64,000 bases of DNA from Octopus sinensis (lineage: Eukaryota), in the NCBI RefSeq assembly GCF_006345805.1, contig NC_043011.1, positions 22,022,464-22,086,463 on the forward strand, read 5' to 3'. The notes below the pieces were generated by a model that saw only the letters and a list, made by a program, of their open reading frames with translations, did not search any database and was not told where the DNA came from. Positions 11,491-63,421 of the stretch are shown in pieces. Each line of letters starts with the position of its first letter. Within the stretch, counting starts at the first letter, position 1. The position numbers and the translations under genes are program-made.

Positions 11491-11930
11491 CAACTTTCCT
11501 TTTTCATTTTTGTGCTAGATTGGTATCTGCTATGCTGATGCTGTTAATAAGTTTGAAAGAGAAATGAGAAAAGCAAAAATTACATTAGTTCATCATTTAT
11601 TTATACCCTGCTAAAGTTTGCTCACAAACGCTCAGTGCACTTTCATCTTATATTTAAAAGGAAATTATAACAATTTTATATTTTCACATATGTCATAAAA
11701 TTTTGAGAAGCTGATCTATTAAGATCAAGTCGCTGTTTACACAATGTTATAAAAATCTTGTTGGAAGTTGTGTTCTTAAGAAATGCATTTTTTTTTAAAT
11801 ATGTATTTAGAGCATTAATCAATGTACTTTATTTTTGATTTTTCTTATTTCTTATGTTTTCTCTATGAAGTAACCTAATTGTTTGTCTAAGAAAGCTTTA
11901 ATTAGGCATTGTTTTGATTGATTGTAACAG

Positions 11931-32130: not shown

Positions 32131-32404
32131 TGTATGTATGTATATATGTATAGGTATTTATGTATATGTATGTATGTATATCTATGTATATGTATGTATA
32201 TATATGTATGTATGTATATATGTGTATGTATGTATGTATATGTATGTATGTACATAATATGTATGTATGTATATAATATATATGTATATGTGTGTGTGTG
32301 TGTGTATATATATGTGTGTATATGTGTGTGTGTGTGTGTGTATATATATGTGTGTATGTGTGTGTGTGTATATATATATATGTGTGTATGTATATATATA
32401 TATA

Positions 32405-34587: not shown

Positions 34588-34734
34588 ATGCCTGCAAATG
34601 CAGATAGTGGCAGAGTCCGTCTAGCGCACGGAGGCACTTTAGAGCTCACCGCGCGTGATGATTCAATGGATTCTAAAAGAGGGTCTGTAATCAAAGCAAC
34701 ACAAGAAGGAGTGGAATGTAAAATATTATTCCAG
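34588..34734 (+). CDS. VPS13: VPS13 exon r (MPANADSG...ECKILFQ), ends at a GC donor
   Basis: ttctag acceptor; CAG|GCAAGT donor is the only strong phase-0 site before an in-frame stop. Confidence 0.85.
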
Positions 34735-35881
34735 GCAAGTCAATTATTTAGTTAATTTGTAATTGAATTATGACATAAAAGAGGTTTCCATTAAATGACT
34801 TTACCAAAATCAATCATAGGTAGGTAAGGTTTTATTTGATATATCCTTACGTATGGTTGTGTGAGTTGGAACATCAACAAATAAATACAGAAGCATATCA
34901 GTGCTGCAGAGATGTGGATCCATAGATGAATGCTTAAGATGCATAGTTTGGATATGTCTTTAGCTATTTATATTGCTCTGTTTTAGAATGTACTAAACAC
35001 AAACACTCAAAACTTGAGCAAAGCAGCTTTATAATAATTGGTTTTAAATTTCAGCATGACACCAGCAGTTTTGGCGAGGGGCTAAGTCTATTAAATCAAC
35101 CTCAGTGCCGAACTGGCACTTATTTTATTGATCCTGAAAGGATGAAAGGCAAAATCAACCTCGGCTGTATTTGAACTTGGAACATGAAAACAGATGAAGT
35201 GCTGCTACACATTTTCGCCTGGCATGATAATGATTCTTCTATCTCACCACCTTTTATAATAATTAATAATTTTACTTATCATAGGTGAATCTACATATTT
35301 CCATAACTGTAACAACCTTCTCAAAACTATGCCTGACATTGCAAGCTGATGAAATGCTCAGAAACTTTACTATGATGACACTATTTACTACGTTGCAATG
35401 TACCACATTTTAAAGCCTACCTTATAACCTAGTGGACTAAATCATTGTAAGTTAAGTAACTTGGCCAGACTAGAGTGAACCACACTGTCAGTGCTAGGAT
35501 ATGAATTGCTGATCATTAAACCAAAAGTGCATATGCCAATGATAGGTTTTCTCCACTGTTCTCAACTCTGGGTTGTCTGCTTTTCTTCTCTCTCGGGTCT
35601 TGTTAGTTTTGAAGTATCACCAATGCTTTTGTAACTTTGCTTTTTACTAGATATTTATCTCTTGGAAGAGGTGATTCATATTAGTCTGGCCCCTATCCCT
35701 TGACTTGTCCAGCATAGGCAGCTCTATCTGGAGCTTACACTCCACTGGCATAGCACTCGGGGTCACTGTGGCACACAAACTAACACACTGCAACAAGAGC
35801 TACACTTTGTGGTGGATGAAAATCATCTGTGGCTCTCAACATACATATGTGCCTCTAATATAGTTCTCATTTTACTTTCAG

Positions 35882-36043
35882 GTGGAACAATTTGGAGCTA
35901 CAAGAGAAGTAGTCATCAAACGTGCAGAGAAACGAGGATTTTATATTAATCATCAGACATTTGGTGGTGATACATGGACAATTGTTTGTGATATAGTTGC
36001 ATCTTATGGACAAAAACGTATCACATTACAATCTATAATACAG
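35882..36043 (+). CDS. VPS13: VPS13 exon s (VEQFGATREV...GQKRITLQSIIQ)
   Basis: tttcag acceptor, CAG|GTAAGC donor, phase 0/0. Confidence 0.92.
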
Positions 36044-37342: not shown

Positions 37343-38224
37343 GTGAGTGCTTCGTTATTAGTACCTTCTTCATTTCATGCATTATCTACCATTATTTCAG
37401 CTACTTCATTGATGGGTATCAAGTTCTGTATTATTGTTATTGATTGCATATATGTATGCAAATAAATAAATGAGAAATGTGTTTTATTTAATTGAAATTA
37501 TAATTTGATAAATATTTTTATTTTGAAAATATGTACTCATTTCATTCACTATGAAATTTGAAAAAAATAAAATTCCAACACTGTTTAGCACAATTTTTTT
37601 CCTTGGGTAGCAACTGCTATTTGCTTACCCATAGAGAATATGGAAAATGACTAATATTTTCTTCAAACTTTGCTTTTGTTACCTTTCTTCAGACCCCAAA
37701 GAATCCCTCTGAACACATGGCTATGATGATCCCCCAATACTCCTGCTCATGATCAGAGATGCACATATTGTCAGTCACCAAGGGACATGCTCAAGTGGTT
37801 AATGTCAAGCAAGTGACAAGCAAATTTGTGGTATTGAACAAAATATTTGCTATAGCAATATTTTTGCTTCAGCAACTCAGTGCTGAATCTGTCTGAAATG
37901 TAATAGAAAATAGGTCAGTTTGAAAACATTGATATCCAGGTTACAAAAGCAAAGTTTGAAAGGAATAGTAAATCATTTCCTTTGATTTCTAGATAGAAGC
38001 AAATAGGAAATAACACTTACTGACCAAAGACATAATTTTGTTACAGTGTAATTATTGTACCTATGTAACATCACCTGATATTACCCACAATGACAAAATT
38101 ATGTTCTCAACATTACGCACCATACACCTCAAAATAAAGAAAAAATATTAATTTTTGTAATAGTTTTTCGTCTTCATTCATTTTTCTTTATATTTTCTTT
38201 TTTTTTTACTTTATCTCTACCTAG

Positions 38225-40478: not shown

Positions 40479-40586
40479 ATTCCTGAATATCAAGGCTCTG
40501 AATGGATTGGGTCTCGTACTCTTGAAATGAATATACCTGAATTATCCCAGTGGACATTCAAATCTTCTAACAGTGATTTGGTTATG
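40479..40586 (+). CDS. VPS13: VPS13 exon x (IPEYQGSEWIG...DLVM)
   Basis: ctctag acceptor, GTAAGT donor, phase 0/0. Confidence 0.88.
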
Positions 40587-41305: not shown

Positions 41306-41407
41306 GACATGGGTTTGCATAACAAAACTGGCAGTGGCAGCCTTGCAATGACATTCTACAGCCCTTATTGGATGATAAATAAAACTGGACAGGATCTATT
41401 CTACAAA
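41306..41407 (+). CDS. VPS13: VPS13 exon y (DMGLH...FYSPYWMINKTGQDLFYK)
   Basis: tgcag acceptor, GTAAGT donor, phase 0/0; VAB repeat motif. Confidence 0.93.
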
Positions 41408-43171
41408 GTAAGTACTTGCAAAATGGAATTTTTTTATCCAATACTTCTGCTCCAACTAACATTAATAAGGAGCTGTCTTCATTTAGATTCATTTAAAAAG
41501 TATTTGCTAAACTGATCTAACTACTGGGACTCAAAATAATGTGGTTATTGCAGATTACTGAAATTATTATATGAAAAGCAAATTCATTATTGTTATCTAA
41601 GAAGCCATGGCTTCAATTAGTCTCTAGTTAAGGTTCCTGCTATCTTTAATGGTTAAGTTGTTATTCATTAATTGCTGAAAAGGCAAATGTTGTTATAATT
41701 TAAATACTCTCTCTCTCTCTCCCCTTAAAGTAAATAAGGTATTCAAACATGTAAATATGGCCCCTAAATTTAACTCAAGAATATATATTAGTAACAATGC
41801 AAACAGAAATGGGAAAGATGAAGTTAATTTAATTGTTGAAAAACTTTCTAACTTGTTTAACAATACTGACACTTCAAAAATTAAATAAATTGTTTTACTG
41901 TGACTTAGAAGAAGAAAAGTCAATATTTGCCAACACAGATGATCATTAGTTGTCTTGGATCCTTCTGTTTTACTTCTTTGTCTAACAATAATTCACCTGA
42001 ACAGTCTAAGATAAGTAATTTCTTTAAGTCATTCAGTATCCATTTGGAGTTTGAATGGATGAACATATTTATTTCCATCTGTTCTGGATATCAGCCAAGT
42101 TCCTTTTTCAGCAATTACCAAAAATAACACTGTTTTGTAGGTATCTGAGATAAACCTTTCCAGTTGCTGTTTTGTTGGTGATAAATTCCAAGATCCTCAA
42201 TCATTGGTATGATACAGTCTATCCTTGTGTGTCTGTGTGAGGGTGTAGCTTTGGTGTAGTTATGTTGGTTTAAATGTTCACCTTGCTGTTGTCTGCAGAT
42301 CTACACATTTCTGTAGCATGTATCTATATAGTTATCCACTGTGGTGTAGATGGAAGACTGAGACAAACTGGTATTTGGTGCTTAATATTAACTTATCAAT
42401 TTTAAAGTCTAAGAATTATTCTGCTATAATAAATTTACTGTAATCATTCGATAAAATTTGGTTGTTTTTTATATTTCTATTTTAAGTTCTAGAAAGCTTT
42501 AGAAATGTTCAGGATACATATTCAGTGTACCTCTAACGGGGTCATCCCATTTAGAACTGATTAGACAGATTAACGACCATTTTCATTAACAAGAAGACAA
42601 AATAGACTTTATATCATATCGCACATTTAATACATCATATATTGTGATTCCACTTCAAATTTTTGAGTGCTTCACGAATTTTGTACTTTATATATATATA
42701 TCTTTTATCTTTTACTAGTTTCAGTCATTAGACTCAGCCATACTGGGACGCTGCCTTGGACAAATTGACTTTTAGTCAAATGAATCAACCCTAGTGCTTA
42801 CATTTTTTGTTAAGCGTGATACTTATACTATTGGTATCTTTTGCTAAACCACTAAGATATGGGGGATGTAAACACACCAACACCAGTTGTCAAGCACTGG
42901 TAGAGGACAAACACAGCCACAAAGACACACACACACATACAATGGGCTTCTTTCCGTTTCTGTCTACCAAATTCACTCAAAAGGCCTTGATCAACCCATG
43001 GCTGTAGTAGAAAACACTTGCCGAAGGTGTCACACAGTAGAGCTGAAACCAGAACCATGTGGTTGGAAAGCAAGCTTCTTCCACAATATGTATATTGTAC
43101 TGTTCCATTATTGGTAGGATCTATATAAAAAGTACTTCAGTCAGTGAAAGATACTTGTTTATTATACACAT

Positions 43172-47652: not shown

Positions 47653-47736
47653 TCTACAGAAAGTACTGATGTAATAAAACATCCTTCAGATTTGAGAGAT
47701 GCTATACTTTTTTCTTTTAAATCCAAATCTAAGAAG
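47653..47736 (+). CDS. VPS13: VPS13 exon z (STESTDVIKHPSDLRDAILFSFKSKSKK)
   Basis: long pyrimidine tract + cag, AAG|GTAAGG donor, phase 0/0; resembles vertebrate HP..FRD.ILFSFK. Confidence 0.9.
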
Positions 47737-48317
47737 GTAAGGCATATTTCAAACCTATATATTTTTTTATTGCCTGTTTTCAAAAAATGAAATTCATATT
47801 AGACATGCTATGCTAATTTGCTAACAATACTTGTTTCTTTACCTTAATACAGATGTGGATTGAACAAAACTGTTCATTAAATTTGTAGAGAATGATTCCA
47901 ATTAAAAACAAACTTTCAAGTTTTGTTTTAACTTCCAAGTTTTCATTATAGTGGTGTATTCACTTATATCTGCAAAAATTCAGTCTGATAAATATATAAA
48001 GCTTAGATAATACCTGGTTATTTGTGCAAAGATATATACATATATATCATTGCTATTATGTTAAACTGTCATATGTCCAAATTTGGCCAAATGCATTTCT
48101 TTTTAAATATTTATTTTTGCTTGCAATAGCTGGTCCTTTTGATCAAACTATCGTGTTTCCAGCTGCTTCAGATGCCAAGATATCAAAAGTTGTCAAAGTG
48201 TAGTACAACAGTTTTGCTATGGAATGGTGAAACTATTTTTTTCTTTCTCTGAAAAAGCAACATCTTGGACTTACGACACTTTTGCATAATAGTAACGATA
48301 TATATATATATATATAT

Positions 48318-48351
<34 letters not shown>

Positions 48352-48926
48352 CACACACACACACACACAGATATTATATTAGTTAGTGATATTTTTCTTG
48401 GTGTAAATCCCTTGCTTTTATTTAGCAGACTTGCAGGTAATTTTTTTTATAAAATGTGTACTAATTTAGCTGTCTGTTCAGATAAGTTGGTTGGCATGTA
48501 ATCATTCTGTAGTTGGGTAAGTTGTTCTCTAGATGTTGCACTTACAGCAGATAGTCAAGAATTATATTATATAATAACGTCTTGTTTTACAGTGGCTGAG
48601 AAGAAAATGCAAAATTTCATTTTGCAATTTCCTTTGCCATCAGCATTCAGATTCTAAGTGTCCAGTTTTCAAGAACTTGAACTTTAAAGTTGAATCATAT
48701 AAAAAAAATTAATTTTTTTCCTTCTTTTTCAATTCAAATAAAAATGAAAAAATTCTTGGCTATAGCTCTATGAAGTAACTGTGTGTATTGTGTAATAATT
48801 TAGTTTGATTGTTGATCTGTTTGTATATGTTTTCTTGTTATTGAAAACGTCTTAGTCAAAAGCTTGGACAATTTCTTTGGTGTTAGTTTTGTTTCCATTT
48901 TTGTTGACCCTCCCTTTACTTAATAG

Positions 48927-48935
48927 TTCATGGAA
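48927..48935 (+). CDS. VPS13: candidate 9-nt VPS13 microexon (FME)
   Basis: ccctccctttacttaatag|TTCATGGAA|gtaagt; phase 0/0. Confidence 0.4.
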
Positions 48936-49212
48936 GTAAGTAGATTTGTTTCAGTATGTAAAGAACATCGAATCTCATTTCACATTGTTAGATGAGAACA
49001 CAATTACTGACCAAAAGAATTGAGTTTTTAATTTTTGTTTCAGGTTGGCTGATATGTAACCAGTCGATCAACTCATTTATTTGGATTATTTTTTCTTTAA
49101 TTTATTGTCCAAGTTGTCATTAATGTAATAACTTAACACTGTGTTTATTTTATTTTATTTTATTTTCTGTTATTTCACTTTATTTCTAAATCACTCCTAA
49201 CTGTGTACCTAG

Positions 49213-49320
49213 GTACACAAGGAAAAAGAAGGAAAAGGTTGGGATAAAGGGGACGAGAAAGAGAAAAAAGAGAAGGACAAAAAAAATCCCAAAGTGAAGG
49301 AGTGGCGCCAACATGGTAAA
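49213..49320 (+). CDS. VPS13: candidate 108-nt VPS13 cassette exon (VHKEKEGKGWDKGDEKEKKEKDKKNPKVKEWRQHGK)
   Basis: pyrimidine tract ...gtacctag acceptor, AAA|GTAAGT donor, phase 0/0, open frame, purine-rich island in AT-rich intron. Confidence 0.65.
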
Positions 49321-51346
49321 GTAAGTGCCAGTTTGATGATGTTGTTCCTAGACTGCTGACCTTTGGTTGATACAGCAACTGAGTATTGTCCCCTTGTTCG
49401 CTAACTCACAATTTGTTTCATTCTGTTCTACTGATCACTGCCAATTCTGATGTCAGCAGCTTTGAGATTGATTGGTTTTATCTCTAAGCAATGAGGTGTA
49501 TCAGCAAGGTTTTGTATGGGATCTAAACAATCATATCTTCAAACTAAAAATCTAACTAAATCTGAGAAGTCACTGTCTAAATACAATTTGTAATTCTGGA
49601 ATATGTTGGTGAAAATATTTCCTATAATCAATGTTTTGTTTTTGTTTTGTACTTTTTTTTAACTATATAGTAGTTTTTAAAACACTTAAATACTGATAAT
49701 AAAAATATTGGACTGCATCCAAATGAAGCATAGCATAGAATGAGTGCTGAAAGAGTTGCAGATTTCGTAATCCTTAGTCTAGGTATGAATTGATACAAAC
49801 TTTTGGAGAATTAGATATTATATTTGACTGGAAATTCAACTGCCCTAATGATTGGAAGTGTGACTTCATAATAGAGGATGGAGGGATTTTTGTCCTACAA
49901 AGGAATGGAGATTACAAACAGAATTAGTAGTGTAAAACAAAAAACCAAATTACCTTCACTTTCTTCAAATATCTTTCTAATTTGTCACAATTTGTTTTCC
50001 AACAATATTTTTTTTTCTTAACTGCCTTAACCACATCCTTGAGGAAAGCATTCCTTTATTCTTTCAAACAAATGGAGGGATTTGAGTACTTAATGAGTAG
50101 CAGGACATAAATTCATTGCCAACAAAACTACTGTAGTCTCTCCATGTTTTCAAAATTTATCTAGATAAATTAGAATGTGTTATAGAATATTTATCCTATC
50201 ATTAGTTTAGAAAGAGGTATATTGTTGATCAAACTGAACTTGTTTCTTAAGAAATTTTTATTGATTATTCTACTTGATAGACATATCTTCCACCACTTCT
50301 AATCCATCATGTATACATGTCCATAAAAGTATATTGAATAGAAAATAGCAATGATTATCAATCTATTCAATACAAATGGAACTGCTCTTCTTTTTATAGT
50401 AATCTGCTATTTGTTAAAGTTTAAAGAGTAACTATTATTTCTATTAAGTAAAAAACATTGTAATTATTTATAATCGTGTTATCTATAACTTCTCATACTA
50501 AATAATCATTTCGAATTTTGGTGTAAGATCAGCAATTTTAGGGGGACGAGGTTAGTTGATTACATCAACCCCAGTATTTAACTGGTACTTTATCTTATCG
50601 ACTCTGGAGGGATGAAAGACAAAGTCAACCTCAGTGGAATTTAAATTCAAAACATGGAAAGCCAGAAGAAATGCTACTAAGCATTTTGTCTGACACATTA
50701 ACAATTCTTCCAGCTCACTGCTTTTCTCATAGTATGTAGTAAAAGCAATAACAGCAGAATCCAAACTGTGTGTACATCATTTAAGTCAAGGCCAATGTGG
50801 TAACTTGGGCTTTTGGTATGATACTCCTCCTGGTATAGCTAATGTCTTTCCTCAGCATCTCCACATATATTATCTACCAAGCACATGTGGCATTACTATG
50901 TATAAACTTCCAGAGGATAAACCTTGAAGCAATGACATGGTGGCATAATCTGTGGACAGTGAACCTCAGTCTCTCCTTTGTCAAATCTTTGTGGTTACCT
51001 ATGGTAGACCAGTACAAAGGTCAACATTGGTCATGTTTCTCATCCATGAGATAGATGCCCAGAGCCATATGATGCAAGATTCTGGTGTAGCACTCATCCA
51101 GCAAGTTCTCCTTGGCAATGTAAATTTTTAAACTTAGTTTTAAAAATATGAACTGAAGAAAATTAACACACAAAGCTAATCAGGTTTTATATATAAAGCA
51201 AACTAACTTCAAGTTAACAAAGTAATGTTGATAAAATTTGCAGCCCAACACCCGCAAAGTCTTTTATCTAAAAAGAAAGATTTATGTTGGTTTAGTTCAT
51301 GAAAAAAGTTCCGTTTTATTATCTTTCCTTGACAAATAAAAAATTA

Positions 51347-51555
51347 AACAATGCTTGCTTTAGAATGTAGGAGAGAAAATTTTAACTTGAATTTAATTAC
51401 ATACTTTTAGTGATTGAAGTTCATTTGACTGTAGAAAGTATCTATTTGATCAGCATTAACAATGCTTGCTTTAGAATATAGGAAAGAAAATTTTAACTTG
51501 AATTTAAAAACATGTTTTTAGTCATTGAGGTTTCTCAGATTCTAGAAAGTATATA
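51347..51555 (+). repeat. ~110-bp tandem duplication
   Basis: aacaatgcttgctttagaat..aaaattttaacttgaattta x2. Confidence 0.85.
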
Positions 51556-54500
51556 CCTTACCCTCATTAACTACCAATTGTCTGGCTGATTTGCTGTTAT
51601 TTTCTTGCTGACTTGTTCTGTTATTTCTGCATGACCTCTTTCTTATGTGTCTTCCTATGTGAATTGCTTTTAATGTGAAGAATCTAATTATACAACTATG
51701 AGCATATCCAACTGCTTTGACCACTCCTGTTGACCTGTTATACCTTAACTGTACAGAACCAATGGAGCATGAGAATCTGTGGTATATCTTCCAAACCCTA
51801 TAATTACAAAATTTCCAACTAAAATATTCTGGTTTTGATCAAAGGGTATTAATCAGAGCAGCATTACTCAATGTTTGTGCTTATTTATCTTTTATTTTTT
51901 GTTTTTCCTTGTTTCAGTCATTCAACTGAGTTCATGCAGGGCATTGCCTTGAAGGGCTTTGTCATATAAATTGACCCCAGTACCTGTTTTAATATCTGCT
52001 ACTTTGTCTATTTGTCTCTTTTGCCAAACCTTTAAGTTATGGGGATGTAAACAAACCAACTCTGGTTGTTAAGCAGTCGGGTGGACAAACACAGATACAC
52101 ACACACATGTATGATGGGCTTCCACAGTTTCCATCTACCAAATTTTCTCACAAGGCATTGGTTGATCCAGAGCTGTAATACAAGACACTTGCTCAAGGTA
52201 CCATGCAGTGGGACTGAACCTGAAACCATGTGGTTGCAAAGTGAGCTTTTTGACCACTCTGTCATTTCTATACCCATTTTCCTATACATTTTCATTAATA
52301 CATTAGGCTTAGAGGTTAAGTGAAACTACAGGTTAGAAAGCATTATGTTTTTAACTGCTGCTTCCATAATTTGAATCTAATAATAAATATAACAGTAGGT
52401 TTAACCTTTTAACATTCCGATTACTCTATCAAGTGTAATGCTTATTTATCCACATTGTTTTGAATTAATCATATATGATCTCATAGCTTCAAGATTTCAA
52501 TGATGTGATTGTTTATTTTTAGAATGGTATTGTAGGGTAAGTGTGAAAGGCTAGATCTGGCCAGTTTGCACATAAAACAGGTAGAATAATTGGGCCTGAT
52601 ATGGCTAGTTTAAATACTAAAGTGTTAAAGTATCAGAATAGTAAACATTGGATTATATTAGCATTCTGTTAAGTTTCTCTTTCAAGTAAGAAATATATAT
52701 CTAGCTTCACTTATAAAATCTTTTATTTCACTATTGATAATAGACAATTGTTTTATTTATTCCTTATAATATTGTTACAAGCGTTGCCTTATTGGCACTT
52801 ATGCCTATGCTAGTAGGGTGCCAAGAGCACCATTCAAGCGTGATCGTTGCCGGAGCAGCCAAATGGCACATAAAAGGGCACCATTCGAGCGTGATCATTA
52901 CCAACATCGCTTCGCTGGCACGTGTAAAAAGATTCGAGCAAGGTCATTGCCAGTACTGCCTGACTGGCACGTAAAAAGCACCCACTACACTCTCGGAGTG
53001 GTTGACATTAGGAAGGGCATCCAGCTGTAGAAACTCTGCCAGATCAAGATTGGAGCCTGGTGCAGCCATCTGGCTCGCCAGCCCTCAGTCAAAATCGTCC
53101 AACCCATGCTAGCATGGAAAGTGGACGTTAAACGAGGATGATGATGATGATGAATACCAGAGATTTTTAATTAAAGATTTTGCAAAGATTTTTAATTAAA
53201 CATTTTGTAAGAGTGGATGTTATTAGTTTAGTTTGGAAGAATGGGCTGTATCTATGGCTTTCAGCTGTTCTCTGAAACCGGTGAGATCAATATAGTTAGC
53301 ATTCCTTTTGAACAGTTGTAAGTTAATGGCTTTGGGAATTATAGAGAGTTGAGGGGTTTTGTTGAGGAGAGCAAAAGACTGGGTGTAATGGTTAGTGAAG
53401 GGACAACTGGGGAGAAGAACATTATGGCTGATAGGAATTGTACTCAATTTTTGTGATAATTTTAATTATCATCATTGTTTTAACATCCACTTTTTCCATG
53501 CTTGTATAGGTTGGATGGTGTCTATTGAGGCAGATTTTCTATGGCCAAATGTCCTTCTTGTCACTAACCCTTGTCTATTTCTAAGCAAGGTAATATTTCC
53601 CCATGGTCAGACATGCTTTTGCAGAATATTGGAAATGGACATTCATTTACAACAATCACACAGTGTCAAAACAGGGAGACACAAGCATACACACACACAC
53701 ATGACAAGCTTCTTTCAGTTTTCATCTACCAATATGACTCACATGGCTTTGGTTGGCCTTGATGCTACACAGTGGGACTCAACCTGAGATCATGTGGTTG
53801 GGAAACAAACTTCTTACCACACACCCATGCCTGCATCTAATATTTCAAACATTTTCACATTTTCTAAAGATGACTTGTCATTGTACAAATATATATTATT
53901 GCCACTTAATAATATCTACCATCTGAATATTAAATATTTAAGAACTGGATTCAGTATCTTCTTATGAGGAAAAGAGATCCCATGTTTGGTTAAGCTTCAA
54001 ATGTAGTCAACTTATAATTAGATAGCCTTGGTGTAAGTTTAATATTATATATTAAAAAAAAAAAATTTCTATGAAGGAGAGAAAAATCAGTTTTTTGGTT
54101 ATGTCAAAAATATAAAACCTAAATGTAGTTATACCCTCTTATCTCTGATTTCTAACAAAATTCTCTCTCTGATTGTTGTTTCACATAAATTAATTTGTCA
54201 TTACTAAAATTTATAGCAGCAACTAAATCAAAGTAGATAATATTTAATTGCATCAGTCAAGGAAAGAAAATCCAAGTTAAAAATGCTAACAGTTGTTACT
54301 AAATAGCACTTTAGTTTTTCATCTCTCTGTCTAATCCTTTAGATAAATCAACTTCGTGTTAATTTAAAGTTGTTGTTCCTGTTTAAATCAGCTCTGTTAA
54401 AGCTGACTTTATAATCTAGTCATAAGGACTACATCAATCTCTCTAATTTTTTACAACAGTAGGGCAGTGGTTCTTAGTTTTTTTTTTCCGTTTATTCACA

Positions 54501-55451
54501 ACACACACTCAAGAAAAAATGTATTAATCCTTTTGATACCAATCTGTTTGAGACTATCCCTGGTTTTGTTACACAAACTTCCTTTTTTTAAATGACCTAA
54601 TCTACAATCTTCCAACAAAATTTCATATTAATTTATGTTTCAAACACCAGCTTAATAATGTCAAAGTTATTTTACAAAATTCTTCCTTTTTTATTTTTAT
54701 CATTTGCAACAAAGGCAATGTATTTCAATAGAAACATGGTAACAAAAGGATTAGGAAAATTTTACAAATTTCCACCTATAGTTAAAATTTAAATTGCCTA
54801 AAAAAAAAGGGTAGTAATAACTTCTTCATTCAATAATTGCCATGCTAGTGTCATGAGACACTGTTTGGAAATCGCTGCAGTGACATTTTGTTTGAGGGAG
54901 ATTTAGCTACTATTTCTCGCAGGTTGAGCAACTTGATTTCAATGAAAAGCTACAAGATTTTTTTCTATTTCACATATAATTTCCCTGAATCACCAAAAGG
55001 AAAGTTGTATTCTTGTGACTTTCCAATTTTTAAAAACAAATATTAGAAATGAAACCATGTTGAATTATGTTCATAAATGAGAAATTCTTAATTTGTTGGA
55101 TAGGGATTTTGAAAGCAATTTAATTTTTTTGTTTGTTTTTTGATGCTTAAGATATTTCAATTTTACTGTATGGTTATTTGCTTGTGTTATTGCTATAAAT
55201 CCTTGTTTATCACTGAAAATAAACTGCTAATTGACAAATATAATTTTTGCTTTTACACCTTATCTAGGATAACTTCTGATTTCAATTTTGTTTATACTTT
55301 TATCGCTTAGATATATGCACCTGTACAAAATTTTTGCACTAAGATTTTTGCCACTATATTACACTCATGCTTCTTATTTTCAGTGGTAAAATATTGACTA
55401 AACTCAAGATTTAGTAACATTTGTATTAATATTATACATACATACATACAC

Positions 55452-55535
<84 letters not shown>

Positions 55536-55727
55536 TCCTCCTCTCTGTTAGGAGGCACAAGCACTTACACACACAATGGAAGCTTCCAGCCACCAAATTC
55601 AATTCAAGACTTCAGTCAGCCTAAGGCTATAGCAGAAGACACTTACCCAAGGTGCCATGCAGTGGGGCTGAACTAAAAACCATGTGGCTGAGAAGCAAAC
55701 TCCCTAACCACACAGCCATGCCTGTGC

Positions 55728-55804
<77 letters not shown>

Positions 55805-55836
55805 ATATATATGAGAGAGTACAATTAAACAGAAGC

Positions 55837-56062
55837 TTCAGTTAAACTCTTTATTATACCATAAATTACATAACCTTTACACATGTTTCACTAGTGTGTA
55901 CTTGTATGGTAATCCTTATAGATAGTTATATAATTACCTTGAAACACCAGATCTTCTGGCAGTCATCTAGGTACTGATTGCCATGCGACATACTAATATA
56001 TGCTAGTGAAATATGTGTAAAGATTATGTAATTCATGACATATAATAAAGAGTTTAATTGAA
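55837..56062. repeat. diverged fold-back inverted repeat
   Basis: ttcagttaaactctttattata / tataataaagagtttaattgaa; tacacatgtttcactag / ctagtgaaatatgtgta. Confidence 0.8.
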
Positions 56063-56758
56063 CCCCCTGTTTTATTCTGCTCTCATAATGTAAAACCAGA
56101 AGAAATGCAGCTAAGCATTTTGTCTGCCATTCTAATGATTCTGCTAGCTCACTACCTTAGCTTGACTAAGAATAATGTTACAGAAATCTTGTATAAAGTG
56201 ATGTTTCAAGCTAAATGACATTTAGTTAAAATTTATTGAATTGTAAGTCATCATAAATCTGTGATATGATCTTAAAATAAACACTGATATATATTTAGCA
56301 ACCCAAAAACTCATAGATTACATGCAGTGACTAGGTGACAGTTCACATGCTGAAAATTTTGGTACCCTGTAACAAATAATAAATGCTTAAGTGTATTTTG
56401 GGATGGTTAACATGTGTCATCCATGCTGCAGTTGTACATTGATATAGAGAACTCTAATGAAGTACAAAATAGTTGGGTTGAGGTCAACCATTTGGATTAT
56501 TAAAAAGGAATACCATTTCTATTAGTATTAGGCACTATTATTGTAATCAAACACCAACAACACTCTCTCTTAACTTAGTATCGTAGTAATAAAATACATT
56601 TAGGAATTATCCAAGGTTCAGAAAAGAAAGATTACAACAAAACAATGTTTTTAAAATTATATTTTTTCTTCAGCCATCATCTAATTGGAAAATCTAGCTA
56701 TTTAGAGCCAATGTAATTTTCATTTAATATATTGCTGCTTTCTTGTGCTTTTTCTCAG

Positions 56759-56788
56759 ACTTCTGAAACAGAACGTGTATTTTCAAAG
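56759..56788 (+). CDS. VPS13: candidate 30-nt VPS13 microexon (TSETERVFSK)
   Basis: ttgctgctttcttgtgctttttctcag acceptor, AAG|GTAAAC donor, phase 0/0. Confidence 0.55.
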
Positions 56789-59414
56789 GTAAACTAACGA
56801 ACACACGCACTTATGCAGTAATTTCCTCAATCACTTATGATGGAACCTCGTCTACTGCACTCAATAGTTTTGAGTATAACTCCTCAAACCAACAGAAACT
56901 TTCTGTTGGTCATCATATATATTTTCTCTCTCCCTCCTTCCCTCTCTCACCCCACATCAAGATTTTATATTCATTTGTAAGACTACTTGCCTTCTAAGCC
57001 ACAAACAGCTAGTGGCTTCTACTTTTCTCTACCATTATTCTCAGTCAGTAGCCTCCTTAGCTCATACTCATGTACTCTGCTCATGCCCAACAGCCATCAC
57101 CTTTCTCATTCACTTTCACCATCTACTAAGGTAATGCTTTATGCCTATTCTCTTCAAATCCAAAGACCTTAATCTTTCTCATGTACTCTCCCATTACATG
57201 GAACTATACATGACTGCACTCCTATCTTGTCAATAAATATTTTTCAATAATATAACATATAAATGCTCTCGATATCAGTTTAGTTACCACAATATTTCCC
57301 ATTACTTCTTTTCTCTTTCTGCTCCTCCCAGAGAACCTCCCTAAAAACACTACTGCACACTTCCTGTAAATTATGCATGCATAAGAGTTGGTATTTGGAA
57401 CAACTTTTTATTCTCTTTTCTGGTATATGGTGTTTTGTACTGATTATCAATCATTGATTAAAAGCTACATGTATATACATGTTCTGTATGTTTCTTTTGT
57501 ACATTAGTTGGTTTGGTGAGAAGGATGGCACATAGAGGTAACTGATCAAGGTTAATGGAATAAATGTGTACTCTGAACTCTTATAGGTTAATGTTCATAA
57601 GAAAAACATACATAAAAAAAATGGAGGATCTCAGTGTTCTTAGAGTCTTTTTTGCTCCATCTTTGATTTAAAAAAAAAATGTGCACTCCATCATGAATTG
57701 GAAAGACTGATATGTAGCCTATAAATTTCAAAAAACGTTTTAATCAAAACTTTATTGCAAGATTTATTAACTTGTTATTTACATACACTGCATTCTGATG
57801 TAACCCTTCCCCACCAAAATACTGCCATGCCCTACCTTGGGAAACACTTGTCTAAAAGTATGCAACTTTGAAAGGTTATAAAACTTATATAGCTAGGCAT
57901 TCTGTTGTTTCCATGTTCTGCAGTACAGCAACTAATGTATAAACAAATTATCATTTAACACTATGATGTTATATGTAGAGTACCTGACATTTAAGCATCT
58001 ATCAGATCAAATGCCCCTTTTAATTCATAGGTCATGGGGTTTTATAAGTCAGAGCAAAAAATATATAGCTATATTAAGATAATCCTTTTAAAAGAGAGAG
58101 AGTCCAAAATGTTGGGCATTTCTCTTCCTCTAAGTTAATATATCTAATGATTTTGTTTTAACTCCTTGATTAAGATCACCCCTTGTCTCCTGATATTCTA
58201 GTGATTTATATTAGATATTTCAGTTCTCGGTCCTAGTCATTTCACTTTTATTAATACCCTTTAGAACACATTATATTGATTATTTTAGGTATTAAAATCT
58301 ATTTTATCATGTGTTCTGGTTGGGGATTTTTAAGCCATAACATGCTATGGTGTCATCATTCTGTGTCATGAGAGTATGTGGAAATGGTTTACTATCACCT
58401 TCTCTGGATAGACATGAAGATTAGAATTTTTAGAAAGTAAAATATGTTGTCCTGAATAAGGAAATGATTGAAAATTGAAATCTCTCCTTCATGGACCCAG
58501 CTTACTCACCTAGAATCATAGATCCTATTGTCATGGATTTTTCTTATCTTGCATGTAACATACAGACAGGAATATTGCTTGACAACTGTCAATCAGCTCC
58601 ACTAGTCTTGGAAAACCTGCAAAGGCATTGGGTGCTGTCCCTTCCTCTTCACCTAGCAAGTAAAAAAGAAAGGAAAAGATAACAGCATGGAAGCTTTATT
58701 ATATATTTTGAATGTATTGCAGCCAATTATAGAATTAAAATGATACTTCTTAAAGCTTGTGTAGAAACACTTCTGTTCCACAATGCCATGGTCTTAGTAA
58801 TAGCAGAAATACACCCGCAGAAGAGATAAATGCTGAACATTGATGTCTTTTATGAGTTTCATTTACAAAATATATAATGTTATGTATATAATCTTCCAGT
58901 ATTATATATGTTTGTAGAATTACTTTAGTTTTGTTAATTCTTAAATCTTCTTTGAAATGTTTAATAATCTCATAAGTAATTACAATTTCATTTTATTTTA
59001 AATTCAGTTAAATTAGTTAAAATATGATTTAAGAATTTTTTGTGTGTGTACATATACACACATTATATATATATATATTCTAAGTATGGCTGTCTTTTTA
59101 AGAAAGAGAACTCAACACATGTGTACAATTTATTGAGATGAAACCAGTCAATAACTGGGAAGAAATCTAACTTCAATACCCTCAATGAAAAGTGTGTGTG
59201 TGTGCACATGTGGTGTTTGTAAAGGGGCAAGGTATATAACTTAGTAGTTTTTATGATGAGGATTCAGTTGAATTACCTGCTCAGTGAATTAGCGTACAAG
59301 CAGCTGACCATTCTGCAGATATGTGTACCTGCCTTTAAAGCAATCTTCAAGGAGGATCAACATGACACAATGTGTGACATGACAATACCATCCAGCAGGT
59401 GTATACATATATGA

Positions 59415-59513
59415 AAATTCTTTAACACATCTTTAATGTTTCTTTACAATTGTGTCTGTTCAGTTAGTACAGAAACAATTGTAACAAATCATTAAAGATG
59501 TGTTAAAGAATTT
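59415..59513. repeat. 99-bp hairpin
   Basis: aaattctttaacacatctttaatg / cattaaagatgtgttaaagaattt perfect 24-bp outer stem. Confidence 0.9.
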
Positions 59514-59712
59514 GTTTTGTCTTCTTATCATCTGGATTATTTACTCTTCGCCAAATCCTCTTTATAGAGAAATCATTTTGAAATTTGGATTTTCTACACC
59601 TGAGAAATTTCAGCTTTGGCTTGGAACCCAACAGTGTTGATAGCCTAGTATTCAAGTTGACTGCTTTTCTGAAAATTACCCTAACTTTACACACTACCAG
59701 ACCTTATATATA

Positions 59713-59773
<61 letters not shown>

Positions 59774-61780
59774 AGATAGATATGAGAAATTATGATAAAC
59801 TCGAGTTTATATCGTTTGTTCCTATGTATGCTTCGCTATTGTAGTTGTTTAGAACTCTGCATTGGATGTTCCAAGTGCAATTGGATGCTTAACCACAATG
59901 GATCATCTGAGGAACACTTTATTGCATTATGTTACAGAGATCTAATGTCTAAAAACGGTGTTTATTGTAATTTCTCCTACATTTTCTCTGTATGCTATGA
60001 TAAAGTAGTGTTACTAAGTACAGTAGTGGACAAACCATTCTACTGGAAGCAGACTCCATGATGATAATCTTCATAGAACTCTAAACCCAACAGTAGCAGT
60101 CATACATATATATGTATGTTTTATATATATATATACTTACATATCTATACACACACACACTCATATACAACATATGCATGCATATTTCACTGTTTTTATA
60201 TGAATTTGAAGTGTGAGTTATACTGTCAATTATTACTGAATTATCATGCTATAAATTTCCTCCTGTTAAAAATAGTATTTATTTATATATATTTAGTCAA
60301 CCATGTTTTGTACCTGTTTTTTGCCTTTGTTCTTGGCTTTTTGCAACAAGCCCCCTTTCATTTCTGCTTTTTTTTATTCCTTCCATTTTGTTTTATTATA
60401 TGTTGTAGTGAAGATTATTATTGTAATTAAATTGCCTCTTTCTCTGCATGATGGTATTTTATATATTCATATTTTTATTATTGTGGTATTTTACAGTTGG
60501 GTATTGTTATTGTTATATTATTTAATGTTTGCACTTGGCTTTGTTCATTTTCTATCAGTTTTTTTTCTCTCAATCTTCTGTGCTTACTAAAATCACTAAT
60601 GATTTAATGAGCCCTGTAATCTTATATATGTAGAAGGTGTCCATAAATTATTTTTTCATCCTCTATGCTTCAAACTGTAAAGATAATTTATGAACACCCT
60701 CTGTGTGTGTGTGTGTTTGTGTGTGGTGTGTGTGTGTGTGTGTGTGTGCATTTATATAATACAGTTTGATTGTATTTCATTGTTTATTAATGTTTTGATT
60801 TTGTTTTTTGTTATATCTTACTAAAACTGAGATTATAACATACAAAGAAGTTTCAATGTTTAAATAAAAAAATAAAACTATCCTAAGCTTTATTATAACT
60901 TTTAACTTTTGAAATTTCCAAGTCTTTAAGGAATAAATTTGTTGACAATTTGTAAAATTGTATGTTGACAAATTCTTTTGAAAACACTAAACTCTACTAT
61001 TATCACTACTACTATTTCTTGTAAAGTAAATTTTTAGTAAATATACTTATCAATATTGTCACCTTAATTTCTAATTGAAATAAATCTTTAATTTATTGGA
61101 AATTCTAATTCAAAATTTACTCAGAATTTTATGGTGTTTTTGGAGTTTAGAAATGTTGTGAATGTTAAAAAAAAATCAATATTTTACCATTTACTTTGTG
61201 AATCAAATAACACTGTTTAAATATAATCATTAATCAGAACAACCCTATTGTAAATATAAATTTATTGAAAATATTTCATTCAATTCTAAAACAAAAAGCA
61301 ATTATTTGTTCACATCAATTTTACTTTATTTATAATATTTTTGTATTATTTCTTACAACAGTTGCTTATTAAATTTCTGAACAAATTGTAGTATTAATTC
61401 TCTGTTTCCAGGTATTTCAATGTAAGAATTAACTAATGGATTGAGTTTCGTTTTTTTTTTTTTAAATATTGAAGTTAAATTAACGCAGTAAAAAGATGGG
61501 ATATCTTAAACATTTCATTCATTATGAATCATTGCCATATATAAAAAAAAGTAATGTTTTTGTTAACATCTTTCCATGGTTTATTGATATCAGAAAGGAC
61601 GTCCAGTTATAATACACTACCTCAAAACGTCCCTTCTAATTTATTGCACTTAAAAATGATGGCAAATAATGGTGATGATAATGATGCTTTCTCATTAACG
61701 GAATTATCATAGACCATTCATGCAGGCCAATGATTCATAATGAAATCAAATGTTTCTTGATGTTATAGACATTTTCACTT

Positions 61781-61831
<51 letters not shown>

Positions 61832-61834
61832 CTC

Positions 61835-61868
<34 letters not shown>

Positions 61869-63313
61869 ATCTTTAGATGAAAATAATCTAACTTGTTCTG
61901 CAGTATTTGCAGTTACTTTGCCATGTAAAAGCATGGTGTTTTAAGACAAAGACCTAAAATTAAATCAAAATAACATAACAAATCTGCTGTATTAAATAAT
62001 TATTTGTAATTATTTTGTTGATGTTTAACCATTGCTAAATAGGTTAGGAAAGTATGGTAATGATTTTTTTTTTCTGTTTTAAACAATAAATAAATGTAAC
62101 AATCTTCTGAAGAAAACAGATTTTAACTCAAGCAAATTGAAATATGTCTGCAAGTGTCTAATAATGTGATAATTTTCCCATCTTAACTTCTGTTTTTGTC
62201 TGGAAAGTAACTTGCTGAATTTTACAATTGCAAATATTTCTTAACTTAAAAATTCTTGGGTGTATTGAAAGTCCTGAAATTGAAAGCAACAGGATTATCA
62301 CATCATTACAATGTACCATGCTCCACTGAAGCATCGTGGATTACATTCTACTTCTGTAACAGTGAACTGGCTGTCTCAAAAGAAAGGGATACTGTGACTC
62401 ATCCTCCATGTACCTCTCTCAGCATAGTGCAGCTGATTCTGAGACCAGGGTGGGGATTATCACTATGTGACAGAGACTTAATTTAGTGCTAAGGCCATTC
62501 CCTCTGGGGAAGAGGGATGGCCTACAAGATTCCTGTGCTGGTGCCACAAAAAAAAGCACTTGTGTTGGTGCCACTTAAAAGTGCTTATTTGGGTGCCACA
62601 TTAAAAACACCCAGCACATAGTGTAAAGTGGTTAGTGTTAGGAAGGGTATCAGGCTGTAGAAACCAAGCTAAGTGAGACTGGAACCTGGTGCAGTTCTCT
62701 AACTTGCCAACTCTGGTTCAAACTATCCAACTCAAGCCAGCATGGGAAATGGACATTGGAGGAGGAGGAGGAGGAGGATTGACCTCATTAGGATTTGAAC
62801 TCAGGACACAAAGAGCTTGAACAAATACTGATGTAGTGACATTTCTGCCAATCAGTAACATAGGTAGCATATTCTCAGTAAAAATACATAAAAATAAGTG
62901 ACTATTTCCAGGATACTGATCAGACACTCAAATTCAATGCCAAGACTTCATATATCAGAGGAATTTTATTGTTTGCTTGTAAATTTTTGATCCTGATCTC
63001 CATTCTAGAGATATATACAAACAGAATTAGCTGTGATTATTCAATATCAATAAGTAGTGTTCAAAATATTATCTTAAGTGAAGCAAATAATCAGAATGTA
63101 ATGATTTTACTTTTTTCCTTTTCATAGATCTTTCAGTTTTCACCACCAAATTTTTATAGCCATCCTTTTGTTCTTTTTTCATCTCTTCCTCTCTCCTCTC
63201 TCTCTATCACTTTGACCCAAAGATCAATTGAAAATCATAAATTAATAACCATAAATCATAATTCATAAATTAAATTTTTACTATAGAATTTTTGAATTCT
63301 TTTTTATTTTTAG

Positions 63314-63421
63314 GCTTGTCTCCAAGTTGCAGAGTCTGAATGGTCTGACAAGTTTTCACTGGATACTGTCGGAAGCTCTGGTACCGTTCAGTGCAAGAAC
63401 AAAGCTTCTGGAATCTATGAA
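63314..63421 (+). CDS. VPS13: VPS13 exon aa (ACLQVAESEWSDKFSLDTVGSSGTVQCK...YE)
   Basis: poly-T tag acceptor, GTAAAT donor, phase 0/0; WS..FSLDTVGS motif. Confidence 0.92.

What the first reader, a model, noticed from the sequence alone, without database searches (positions are those of the whole stretch)
49213..49320. 108-nt lysine/glutamate-rich cassette exon with no VPS13 counterpart I recognise
cctag|GTACACAAG...GGTAAA|gtaagt encodes VHKEKEGKGWDKGDEKEKKEKDKKNPKVKEWRQHGK. It is highly charged and probably disordered, and follows the polybasic KSKSKK. It is missed by the + strand ORF track. An overlapping donor (CATG|GTAAAG at 49316) would shift the frame and could yield an NMD isoform. A polybasic insert could alter anionic lipid binding or localisation (inference).
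Basis: partly seen in the sequence, partly recalled or inferred. Interest (0 to 1): 0.72.

Follow-up and report, generated by a model that had tools for sequence, protein, structure and literature searches.

The report
Conserved lysine-rich alternative exon in VPS13
The 108-base segment is a genuine coding exon of an octopod VPS13A/C-type lipid-transfer gene, shared with other molluscs and optionally included in at least one of them; it adds a floppy, positively charged loop to the adaptor-binding domain, and its function is untested.

Summary
Window 49213-49320 is cctag|GTACAC...GGTAAA|gtaagt, 108 nt, open only in frame 0. It lies 1.5 kb into the 15.6-kb phase-0 intron between two VPS13 exons, 47653-47736 (...LFSFKSKSKK) and 63314-63421 (ACLQVAESEWSDKFSLD...).

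Splice sites plus an open frame are not significant on their own: about one equally good decoy is expected per intron of this size. Comparison with other species decides it.

- Argonauta hians gene model GAB1605843.1 contains the orthologous exon (27/34 residues identical, one in-frame 2-codon gap).
- Patella caerulea has annotated isoforms with and without a homologous 23-aa exon. Pomacea canaliculata has one model with it and one without.
- Four unidentified animal contigs carry a lysine-rich, frame-preserving exon ending ...AAA|GTA (GTAAGT in three, GTAGGT in L089) in the same intron.
- Against Argonauta, the 50 nt upstream of the exon are 74% identical, versus 42-46% for the neighbouring constitutive exons. 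A 51-nt purine-rich core is identical.

Human VPS13A and VPS13C have only 5-6 residues at this point. No transcript data exist for this species, so alternative use here is inferred. The lipid-binding idea is untested. Ordinary in kind, modestly interesting.

The parts
40479..40586 (+). Constitutive VPS13 exon (IPEYQGSEW...SNSDLVM) lying between the conserved asparagines of VAB repeats 3 and 4
   Evidence: Homologues in L004, L006, L007, L008, L012 and L020 and in Argonauta P0089 residues 1563-1596. I first mistook it for an alternative exon and corrected that.
41306..41407 (+). Constitutive exon carrying the conserved asparagine of VAB repeat 4 (YSPYWMINKTGQDLFYK)
   Evidence: Phase 0/0, cag|GAC...AAA|gtaagt. 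N275 is invariant in the 41-sequence alignment A3. Aligned to human VPS13A/C and to 7u8t.
47653..47736 (+). Upstream flanking constitutive exon, STESTDVIKHPSDLRDAILFSFKSKSKK
   Evidence: ttcag|TCT...AAG|gtaagg, phase 0/0. 100% match to its Argonauta counterpart's position at L090 33798-33881.
49163..49212 (+). Conserved intron segment upstream of the exon: pyrimidine-rich tract, a CTAAC branch-point-like element at 49197-49201, and acceptor GTGTACCTAG
   Evidence: 74% identical to Argonauta over -50..-1, against 46% and 42% for the two flanking constitutive exons. The branch-point assignment is inference.
49202..49219 (+). 18-nt perfect palindrome TGTGTACCTAGGTACACA that places the acceptor AG in the loop of a 7-bp hairpin
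   Evidence: Self-match in blastn. RNA fold -21.1 kcal/mol, z = -2.07. Only partly kept in Argonauta, so any regulatory role is speculative.
49213..49320 (+). The exon: 108 nt, phase 0/0, 36 codons, net charge +5, lysine/glutamate-rich
   Evidence: Orthologue in Argonauta at L090 37840-37941. Homologous exons in Patella, Pomacea, L006, L085, L086 and L089.
49234..49284 (+). 51-nt purine-rich core identical at every base to Argonauta; candidate exonic splicing enhancer
   Evidence: Unbroken run of invariant columns in alignment A4. Only 2 synonymous changes in the whole exon, against 12 in the next exon. The enhancer role is inference.
49321..49362 (+). Donor GTAAGT and a partly conserved downstream intron block (TGATGTTGTTC...CTGC)
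   Evidence: AAAGTAAGTGC is shared by the window, L085 and L086; Argonauta keeps AAAGTAAG.
49316..49321 (+). Overlapping weaker donor GTAAAG; its use would shift the frame
   Evidence: Score 1.1 against 3.7; stop codon 8 codons into the next exon. Absent at this position in L086 and L006.
63314..63421 (+). Downstream flanking constitutive exon, ACLQVAESEWSDKFSLDTVGSSGTVQCKNKASGIYE
   Evidence: tttag|GCT...GAA|gtaaat, phase 0/0. More than 60 homologues in other animals.

Best explanation
Window 49213-49320 is a real protein-coding exon of the octopod orthologue of VPS13A/C, a bridge-like lipid-transfer protein. It is shared with other molluscs. It lies in a phase-0 intron, so the flanking exons join in frame with or without it. 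[quoted passage not shown] It is most likely a regulated cassette exon. The acceptor is weak, and an 81%-purine exon core is conserved base for base, which suggests that inclusion depends on purine-rich exonic enhancers bound by SR/Tra2-type factors (inferred). At the protein level it lengthens an already basic loop into a disordered, net-positive tail (+5) with a conserved end, K-V-K-E-[W/M]-x-Q-x-G-K, without disturbing the beta-sandwich fold. The most likely role is to change electrostatic contacts of the VAB domain with an acidic membrane surface or a partner, away from the known adaptor site in repeats 5-6 (inferred, untested). Shown: the anatomy, the conservation, annotated inclusion and skipping in relatives, and the predicted disorder. 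Inferred: alternative use in this species, the enhancer mechanism, and the electrostatic function.
For: Gene identity: Pfam VPS13_VAB (6.4e-29) and VPS13_M. Human VPS13A 9yg5_B scores 3e-65 and VPS13C 9yqp_B 1.1e-59. Gene structure: direct joining of 47736 to 63314 is in frame and gives the canonical motif, and the exon is 3n and phase 0/0. Orthologue: Argonauta hians GAB1605843.1 reads ...KSKSKK|GHRESKGWDKGDEKEKKEKDKKASKVKEWHQSGK|ASLQVAESEWS, 27/34 identical with one in-frame 6-nt gap, located at L090 37840-37941. Cassette status in relatives: Patella caerulea KAK6178553/54/56 include, and KAK6178555/57 lack, KINSEKSDDKKAVKVKEMKQSGK. Pomacea XP_025082324.1 includes DKEEGKHEGEKKSKDKVHVMKQAGK and PVD36340.1 lacks it. 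Further lysine-rich, 3n, phase-0 exons ending ...AAA|GTA (GTAAGT in L006, L085 and L086; GTAGGT in L089) lie in the same intron in L006, L085, L086 and L089. With fixed criteria there are 4 hits in 51 kb of this intron across species and 0 in 980 kb of control sequence (the criteria were set after seeing the hits). Intron conservation upstream is 74% against 42-46% for neighbouring exons, and a 51-nt core is identical. Structure: pLDDT is below 50 for residues 311-343 of the model, the flanking strands are confident, mean pLDDT is 83.8, and the best fold match is 7u8t, the Vps13 VAB domain, at E = 7.7e-18. All nine inserts are net positive, +2 to +11.
Against: No RNA evidence from the window's own species could be obtained, so both inclusion and skipping here are inferred. 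Gene models in relatives may be partly ab initio. The single Argonauta model and both Patella vulgata RefSeq isoforms include the exon, which also fits constitutive use. The insert contains 9 acidic residues among 36, so it is a mixed-charge rather than a purely polybasic segment. Between the two octopods it shows 7 nonsynonymous against 2 synonymous codon changes, so protein-level constraint outside the conserved core and C-terminal motif is weak. The exon was not found in annelid-like and arthropod-like loci.
Confidence: 0.72

Rival explanations
1. The exon is real but constitutive in octopods: it is always spliced in, so it is simply a lineage-specific longer loop and not a regulated cassette.
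For: The only Argonauta model includes it. Both Patella vulgata RefSeq isoforms include it. The octopod loop without the insert is 15 residues, shorter than the canonical 19, so the insert might compensate.
Against: Patella caerulea has annotated skipped isoforms, and one Pomacea model skips it. The acceptor is much weaker than in the neighbouring exons. Flanking intron conservation and the shortage of synonymous change match what is typical of regulated alternative exons (general knowledge of conserved alternative exons).
Confidence: 0.2
2. It is a chance pseudo-exon: an intronic purine tract that happens to be open and flanked by AG and GT, and is never spliced into mRNA.
For: About one decoy with equal or better splice scores is expected per intron of this size. 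Purine-rich DNA is naturally poor in stop codons. The protein searches found no peptide containing it.
Against: It keeps its position, phase, 3n length, composition, terminal motif and donor across cephalopods, gastropods and four further contigs. There were 0 comparable elements in 980 kb of control sequence. It has an in-frame indel relative to Argonauta. It is included in independent gene models.
Confidence: 0.04
3. The conserved block is an RNA- or DNA-level regulatory element, such as an intronic splicing regulator or an enhancer, and its open frame is incidental.
For: A 51-nt core is identical at every base and there are few synonymous changes. Conservation extends into the intron.
Against: Length varies from 23 to 51 codons among species yet is always a multiple of 3 and open in the phase set by the flanking exons. 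AG and GTAAGT sit exactly at the ends in the window, Argonauta, L006 and L085, L086 is cut short at its 5' end, and L089 has GTAGGT. The amino-acid motif KVKE[W/M]xQxGK is kept between cephalopods and gastropods, whose exon DNA could not be compared here.
Confidence: 0.03
4. It is an exonised piece of a transposable element or dispersed repeat.
For: The upstream pyrimidine tract is an (ATTTT)n microsatellite, and an 18-nt palindrome spans the acceptor. These could be leftovers of a mobile element.
Against: There is no second copy in the 64-kb window. The element is orthologous at the same site in Argonauta, and homologous exons occur in gastropods, so any such origin would be ancient and no longer repeat-like.
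Confidence: 0.01

Closest known systems
Orthologous exon in the Argonauta hians VPS13 gene model GAB1605843.1 (GCA_054771915.1, L090 37840-37941)
   Same: It occupies the same intron with the same phase, acceptor GTGTACCTAG|G and donor GGTAAA|GTAAG. 27/34 residues are identical and a 51-nt core is identical.
   Different: It is 102 nt rather than 108 nt (a 2-codon gap near the start). Its pyrimidine tract is stronger, through an extra CCCTTCCT. The palindrome around the acceptor is only partly kept.
Patella caerulea SNE40_013319 isoforms (KAK6178554.1 with the 23-aa exon, KAK6178555.1 without); Patella vulgata 'VPS13A isoform X1/X2'; Pomacea canaliculata XP_025082324.1 (with) and PVD36340.1 (without)
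   Same: The insertion point is the same, between ...FSKKK and A-x-L-x-[VLI]. The inserts are lysine-rich and end in KVKEMKQSGK or VHVMKQAGK. Both included and skipped forms are annotated.
   Different: They are shorter (23-25 aa). The N-terminal half is not alignable with the octopod exon. The constitutive loop keeps the FFS/MFS hydrophobic residues that octopods lack.
Human VPS13A splice isoform B (alternative exon 69)
   Same: It is also alternative splicing of a VPS13A gene that adds a short disordered charged stretch and changes which partner is bound (PMC9436381, read).
   Different: It lies at the C-terminal end. It is acidic, brings a stop codon and removes the PH domain. It is not an in-frame internal loop of the VAB domain. 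Human VPS13A and VPS13C have only 5-6 residues at the site studied here.
Disordered basic membrane-binding segments such as the MARCKS effector domain or the K-Ras hypervariable region (comparison from general knowledge, not tested)
   Same: They are also net-positive, flexible, and have an aromatic or hydrophobic residue among the lysines (W10 and W31 here).
   Different: Here a quarter of the residues are acidic. There is no lipid anchor, no serines for a phospho-switch in the octopod version, and no binding data at all.
Conserved alternative exons flanked by conserved intron sequence (general class, from the splicing literature; from memory)
   Same: The length is a multiple of 3, one splice site is weak, about 50-90 nt of flanking intron is conserved, and synonymous change is suppressed.
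   Different: Nothing unusual relative to that class.

Membership tests
VPS13A/C-type bridge-like lipid-transfer protein, VAB domain | Significant match to the VPS13_VAB and VPS13_M profiles | tested here: met
   PF25036 scores 6.4e-29 (101 bits, cut-off 22.6) and PF25033 scores 3.1e-17.
VPS13A/C-type bridge-like lipid-transfer protein, VAB domain | Closest solved relatives are VPS13A/C rather than B or D | tested here: met
   9yg5_B human VPS13A scores 3e-65 and 9yqp_B VPS13C scores 1.1e-59; no VPS13B or VPS13D chain was listed. The Patella vulgata orthologue is named VPS13A by RefSeq.
VPS13A/C-type bridge-like lipid-transfer protein, VAB domain | Repeats of about 100 residues, each with a conserved asparagine near its start (PMC7068118) | tested here: met
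   Asparagine motifs ENRTG, VHNHLS, IHNLLP and INKTG are spaced about 100-120 residues apart. N176 and N275 are invariant and N57 nearly invariant in 41 sequences. Only repeats 1-4 lie in the window.
VPS13A/C-type bridge-like lipid-transfer protein, VAB domain | Beta-sandwich fold like the solved VAB domain | tested here: met
   The AlphaFold2 model is all-beta with pTM 0.80. Its best PDB match is 7u8t_A at E = 7.7e-18 and TM 0.67.
Conserved alternative (cassette) exon | Frame-preserving, with canonical AG/GT borders | tested here: met
   108 nt, phase 0/0, tag|G...AAA|gtaagt.
Conserved alternative (cassette) exon | Both inclusion and skipping isoforms observed in this species | not testable with these tools
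   No transcript data for the window's species could be reached.
Conserved alternative (cassette) exon | Inclusion and skipping isoforms observed for the homologous exon in relatives | tested here: met
   Patella caerulea isoform pairs differ by exactly the 23-aa exon. The two Pomacea models differ by the 25-aa exon. These are database gene models, not reads that I inspected.
Conserved alternative (cassette) exon | Flanking intron conservation above that of neighbouring constitutive exons | tested here: met
   The 50 nt upstream are 74% identical, against 46% (exon 47653) and 42% (exon 63314), in comparison with Argonauta.
Conserved alternative (cassette) exon | At least one splice site weaker than in constitutive neighbours | tested here: met
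   The acceptor scores -0.4, against 6.3 and 2.6 for the neighbours and a typical 2-6 across 24 exons. A generic matrix was used, not a species-trained one.
Poison (NMD-triggering) exon | Inclusion introduces a stop codon or a frameshift | tested here: not met
   With the main donor the exon is open and 3n. Only the weaker donor at 49316 would shift the frame.
Exonised dispersed repeat | Additional copies elsewhere in the genome | tested here: inconclusive
   There is no other copy in the 64-kb window. The whole genome was not available.
Polybasic membrane-binding motif | Cluster of net positive charge in a flexible segment | tested here: met
   Net +5 overall and +4 in the last 15 residues. 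All nine homologous inserts are net positive. pLDDT is below 50.
Polybasic membrane-binding motif | Demonstrated binding to acidic lipids | not testable with these tools
   This needs liposome or cell-localisation assays.

The most novel reading that the evidence does not exclude
Repeat 4 of the VAB domain may carry splicing-controlled charged loops that retarget the single protostome VPS13A/C orthologue between membrane contact sites. The mollusc-wide lysine-rich exon described here would be one such switch. Lysine/serine-rich inserts at the neighbouring loop in arthropod models, and a 50-aa insert at the same site in a tapeworm, would be parallel solutions. Together they would do by splicing part of what vertebrates do with separate A and C paralogues.
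Probability: 0.12. Interest if true: 0.7.

Novelty: new member of a known kind. Interest (0 to 1): 0.4.

Why it matters
VAB repeats 1-4 of VPS13 proteins have no assigned partner; the known adaptor site is in repeats 5-6 (PMC7068118). A regulated, conserved, positively charged insert in repeat 4 is a natural variant that could be used to ask what this face of the domain touches. For annotation, it shows that a short, start-less, low-complexity exon deep in a 15.6-kb intron is real. It also shows that splice-site scores alone could not have told it from a decoy; only cross-species comparison did. The exon is already present in automated gene models of related molluscs. My literature searches found no paper describing it. 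So the finding is a sound annotation with a modest open functional question, not a new kind of system.

Tried and rejected
(1) Word-indexed protein searches with a conserved exon and with the junction peptide gave almost only genomic ORF fragments and no peptide containing the insert. I nearly concluded 'no support' before the exhaustive search.
(2) Exact look-ups of the antisense ORF over the exon and of P0002 found nothing.
(3) A repeat search within the window found no second copy.
(4) The generic splice-site and ORF decoy model showed that the feature is not significant by itself. Mononucleotide shuffles understate the decoy rate (0.1 per intron) because they destroy pyrimidine and purine tracts.
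(5) A lysine-rich ORF in L003 (933-1016) was rejected because it has no usable splice sites.
(6) I first read 40479-40586 as an alternative exon because of P0002. Homologues in six loci and in Argonauta show that it is constitutive.
(7) P0241 looked like a possible transcript of the L006 species but is a genomic read-through ORF.
(8) A literature search for the contig prefixes JAAUXT and JAAUYA found nothing, so the organisms behind L005/L006 and the other metagenome contigs remain unidentified.
(9) The hairpin around the acceptor is only partly conserved in Argonauta, so I do not rely on it.

Full report
**What is there.** The stretch reads ...ctgtgtacctag|GTACACAAGG...CATGGTAAA|gtaagtgcc. 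Only this frame is open; the other two contain stops. The segment is 81% purine. No + strand ORF is listed because there is no start codon.

**Gene context.** The + strand carries a VPS13 gene.
- Thirteen exons between 26282 and 63421 join into an uninterrupted 534-residue reading frame. A fourteenth exon, 40479-40586, was added.
- With the candidate's 36 residues included, the 570-residue product matches Pfam VPS13_M and VPS13_VAB. It also matches the solved human VPS13A (9yg5_B, 3e-65) and VPS13C (9yqp_B, 1.1e-59).
- The exon before the candidate is 47653-47736 (STESTDVIKHPSDLRDAILFSFKSKSKK, ttcag|...|gtaagg).
- The next conserved exon is 63314-63421 (ACLQVAESEWSDKFSLDTVGSSGTVQCKNKASGIYE, tttag|...|gtaaat).
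- Both borders are phase 0. The two exons therefore join in frame on their own, giving the canonical motif LFSF-KSKSKK-ACLQV-ESEWSDKFSLD.
- The candidate lies 1.5 kb into this 15.6-kb intron and would add exactly 36 residues.

**Is it more than chance?** On its own, no.
- With a generic splice-site matrix the candidate's donor is typical (3.7). Its acceptor is weak (-0.4, against 2-6 for most of this gene's exons).
- The candidate is the only such element in the intron. However, the non-coding minus strand of the window holds four equally good decoys (3n, open, bounded by AG and GT) per 64 kb. That is about one per intron of this size.
- No second copy of the segment exists in the window.
- Word-indexed protein searches found only genomic ORF fragments and nothing containing the peptide.

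**Comparative evidence.** This settled the question.
- Scanning the homologous intron in contigs from other animals turned up lysine-rich, open, 3n, phase-0 segments ending ...AAA|GTA (GTAAGT in three, GTAGGT in L089):
  - L006 9022-9153 (44 codons);
  - L085 884-1036 (51 codons, 9 kb upstream of the SEWSDKFSLD exon);
  - L086 (cut short by the contig end);
  - L089 7794-7865 (24 codons).
- The window, L085 and L086 share AAAGTAAGTGC at the donor.
- With fixed criteria there are 4 such elements in 51 kb of this intron across species and none in 980 kb of control sequence. The criteria were chosen after seeing the hits, so this is indicative, not a formal test.
- The exhaustive HMMER search with the 170-residue inclusion isoform found full-length proteins that align through the insert in one piece:
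  - Argonauta hians GAB1605843.1 (86% identity);
  - Patella caerulea KAK6178554.1 and Patella vulgata XP_055955359.1, 'VPS13A isoform X1' (57%);
  - Pomacea canaliculata XP_025082324.1 (47%) (names).
- Argonauta reads ...KSKSKK|GHRESKGWDKGDEKEKKEKDKKASKVKEWHQSGK|ASLQVAESEWS. That is 27/34 identical to the window, with a single in-frame two-codon gap.
- In Patella caerulea, three isoforms of one gene contain KINSEKSDDKKAVKVKEMKQSGK and two lack exactly these 23 residues.
- In Pomacea, the RefSeq model contains DKEEGKHEGEKKSKDKVHVMKQAGK and the GenBank model lacks it.
- The shared end of the insert is K-V-K-E-[W/M]-x-Q-x-G-K.
- Across 110 animal VPS13A/C-like sequences the loop between LFSF and WSDKFSLD is 19 residues in 83 cases. 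It is 43-49 only in the mollusc inclusion forms.
- Human VPS13A and VPS13C leave 5-6 residues unaligned here.

**DNA comparison with Argonauta.** The Argonauta locus could be fetched (L090). The orthologous exon is at 37840-37941, between the counterparts of the two flanking exons.

| Exon | 50 nt upstream, identity | Synonymous codon changes | Nonsynonymous codon changes |
|---|---|---|---|
| Candidate 49213-49320 | 74% | 2 | 7 |
| 47653-47736 | 46% | 6 | 6 |
| 63314-63421 | 42% | 12 | 2 |

- The acceptor GTGTACCTAG|G and the donor GGTAAA|GTAAG are conserved.
- A 51-nt purine-rich core (49234-49284) is identical at every base.
- Raised flanking-intron conservation, suppressed synonymous change and a weak splice site are the usual marks of regulated alternative exons (general knowledge of the splicing field).

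**Place in the protein.**
[quoted passage not shown] Adaptors bind in repeats 5-6 (PMC7068118).
- In this gene the asparagine motifs are ENRTG, VHNHLS, IHNLLP and INKTG. The last two are invariant in a 41-sequence alignment.
- Mapping onto 7u8t places INKTG in repeat 4 (my inference from the spacing).
- The insert falls about 45 residues after that asparagine.
- An AlphaFold2 model of residues spanning repeats 2-4 with the insert has mean pLDDT 83.8 and pTM 0.80. The strands ILFSF (301-304) and ACLQV (349-353) are confident. pLDDT is below 50 with no secondary structure over 311-343, which is the insert.
- The model's best PDB match is the Vps13 VAB domain, 7u8t (E = 7.7e-18).

**How it most likely works.**
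- At the RNA level, the combination of a weak acceptor, an 81%-purine exon and a core frozen at the nucleotide level suggests that inclusion depends on purine-rich exonic enhancers (inference).
- The acceptor AG also sits in the loop of a 7-bp hairpin formed by an 18-nt palindrome (z = -2.07). That hairpin is only partly kept in Argonauta, so I give it little weight.
- At the protein level, the insert lengthens an already basic loop (KSKSKK; KSKSFFGKKK in most animals) into a flexible, net-positive tail. Net charge is +5 here and +2 to +11 in all nine homologues.
- The best guess is a change in electrostatic contact with an acidic membrane or a partner on the repeat-4 face. This is untested.

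**The overlapping donor.** CATG|GTAAAG at 49316 exists. It scores 1.1 against 3.7 for the main donor. Its use would shift the frame and bring a stop 8 codons into the next exon. L086 and L006 have no GT at that position. There is no evidence that it is used.

**What is not shown.** I found no transcript data for the window's species. The window is an octopod: 86% protein identity to Argonauta over the 170-residue query and 95% over the aligned exon to UniParc UPI00071C24A7. Inclusion and skipping in this animal are therefore inferred from relatives. The gene models in relatives are database entries whose supporting reads I could not inspect. The organisms behind L006, L085, L086 and L089 are unknown.

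**Comparison with what is known, and novelty.**
- Known alternative splicing of human VPS13A concerns an alternative exon 69. That exon adds an acidic disordered tail and a stop codon and removes the PH domain (PMC9436381). It is unrelated in position and effect.
- Searches for VPS13 with 'VAB domain' and 'alternative splicing', and for VPS13A/C splice variants, found no description of this exon.
- The exon already appears in automated annotations of related molluscs.
- I rate it a new member of a known kind: a conserved, frame-preserving alternative exon encoding a disordered charged loop. Interest is modest.

Noticed in passing
window 42141-42206 (+): This looks like a second conserved in-frame exon-like element (66 nt, ttgtag|GTATCT...CATTG|gtatga, VSEINLSSCCFVGDKFQDPQSL) in the intron after exon 41306-41407. 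P0002 (UniParc UPI00071C24A7, 95% identical relative) joins it directly to that exon and then reads into the intron to a stop. It is open and 68% identical in Argonauta (L090 31331-31396), with 74% identity in the 50 nt upstream, but it is not in the Argonauta gene model. It may be another cassette, or a terminal exon, in VAB repeat 4.
   Followed up: partly
proteins P0237, P0238, P0235, P0129, P0130, P0240 (output): Arthropod VPS13 models (Trichonephila clavata, Lygus hesperus, Timema douglasi and others) differ from their sister isoforms by short lysine/serine-rich inserts, such as RSKKGFEKFEGKNRK and RSSKADKEIGDSSE. These lie at the neighbouring junction, right after the L-x-Y-[KR] that follows the repeat-4 asparagine. 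Repeat 4 may be a hotspot for optional charged loops.
   Followed up: no
proteins P0188 and P0233 versus P0230 and P0231 (Mesocestoides corti): Tapeworm VPS13 isoforms differ by a 50-residue serine-rich insert (SSSQLQLHSLSDSDPEKGDSNTSASATPQHHWHRPFKARHRGLHLARKVK) at exactly the same point between the LFSF-type strand and the W-S-x-K-F-S-L-D strand.
   Followed up: no
window 34735-34740 (+): Exon 34588-34734 appears to use a GC donor (TTCCAG|gcaagt). No GT donor keeps the frame to the next exon at 35882.
   Followed up: partly
L002 739-1341: A metagenome contig (ENA ERZ23498860) carries about six tandem copies, roughly 90 nt apart, of the 5' part of the SEWSDKFSLD exon upstream of the intact exon. 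The origin and meaning are unknown.
   Followed up: no
window 47720-47736 and 63314-63340 (the loop without the insert): In octopods the constitutive loop between LFSF and WSDKFSLD is 15 residues (KSKSKK + ACLQVAESE). In 83 of 110 animal sequences it is 19 residues. The octopod loop lacks the FFG-type hydrophobic residues found in most animals (KSKSFFGKKKA...).
   Followed up: partly
window 914-1240 (+), 12743-13186 (+), 11072-11503 (-), 32131-32938 (+): Long intronic ORFs look like transposon remnants. Two resemble mariner/Tc1-type transposase C-termini (...HHDNARPHTS......LAPSDYHLF...). Two resemble LINE-type reverse-transcriptase tails (...LRWLGH...). This is judged by eye and was not tested against any library.
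   Followed up: no
window-wide: On the + (sense) strand only 5 stop-free stretches rich in charged residues were found, 3 of them the three frames of the candidate. The minus strand has 18. This fits the T-over-A bias of the introns on the transcribed strand.
   Followed up: partly
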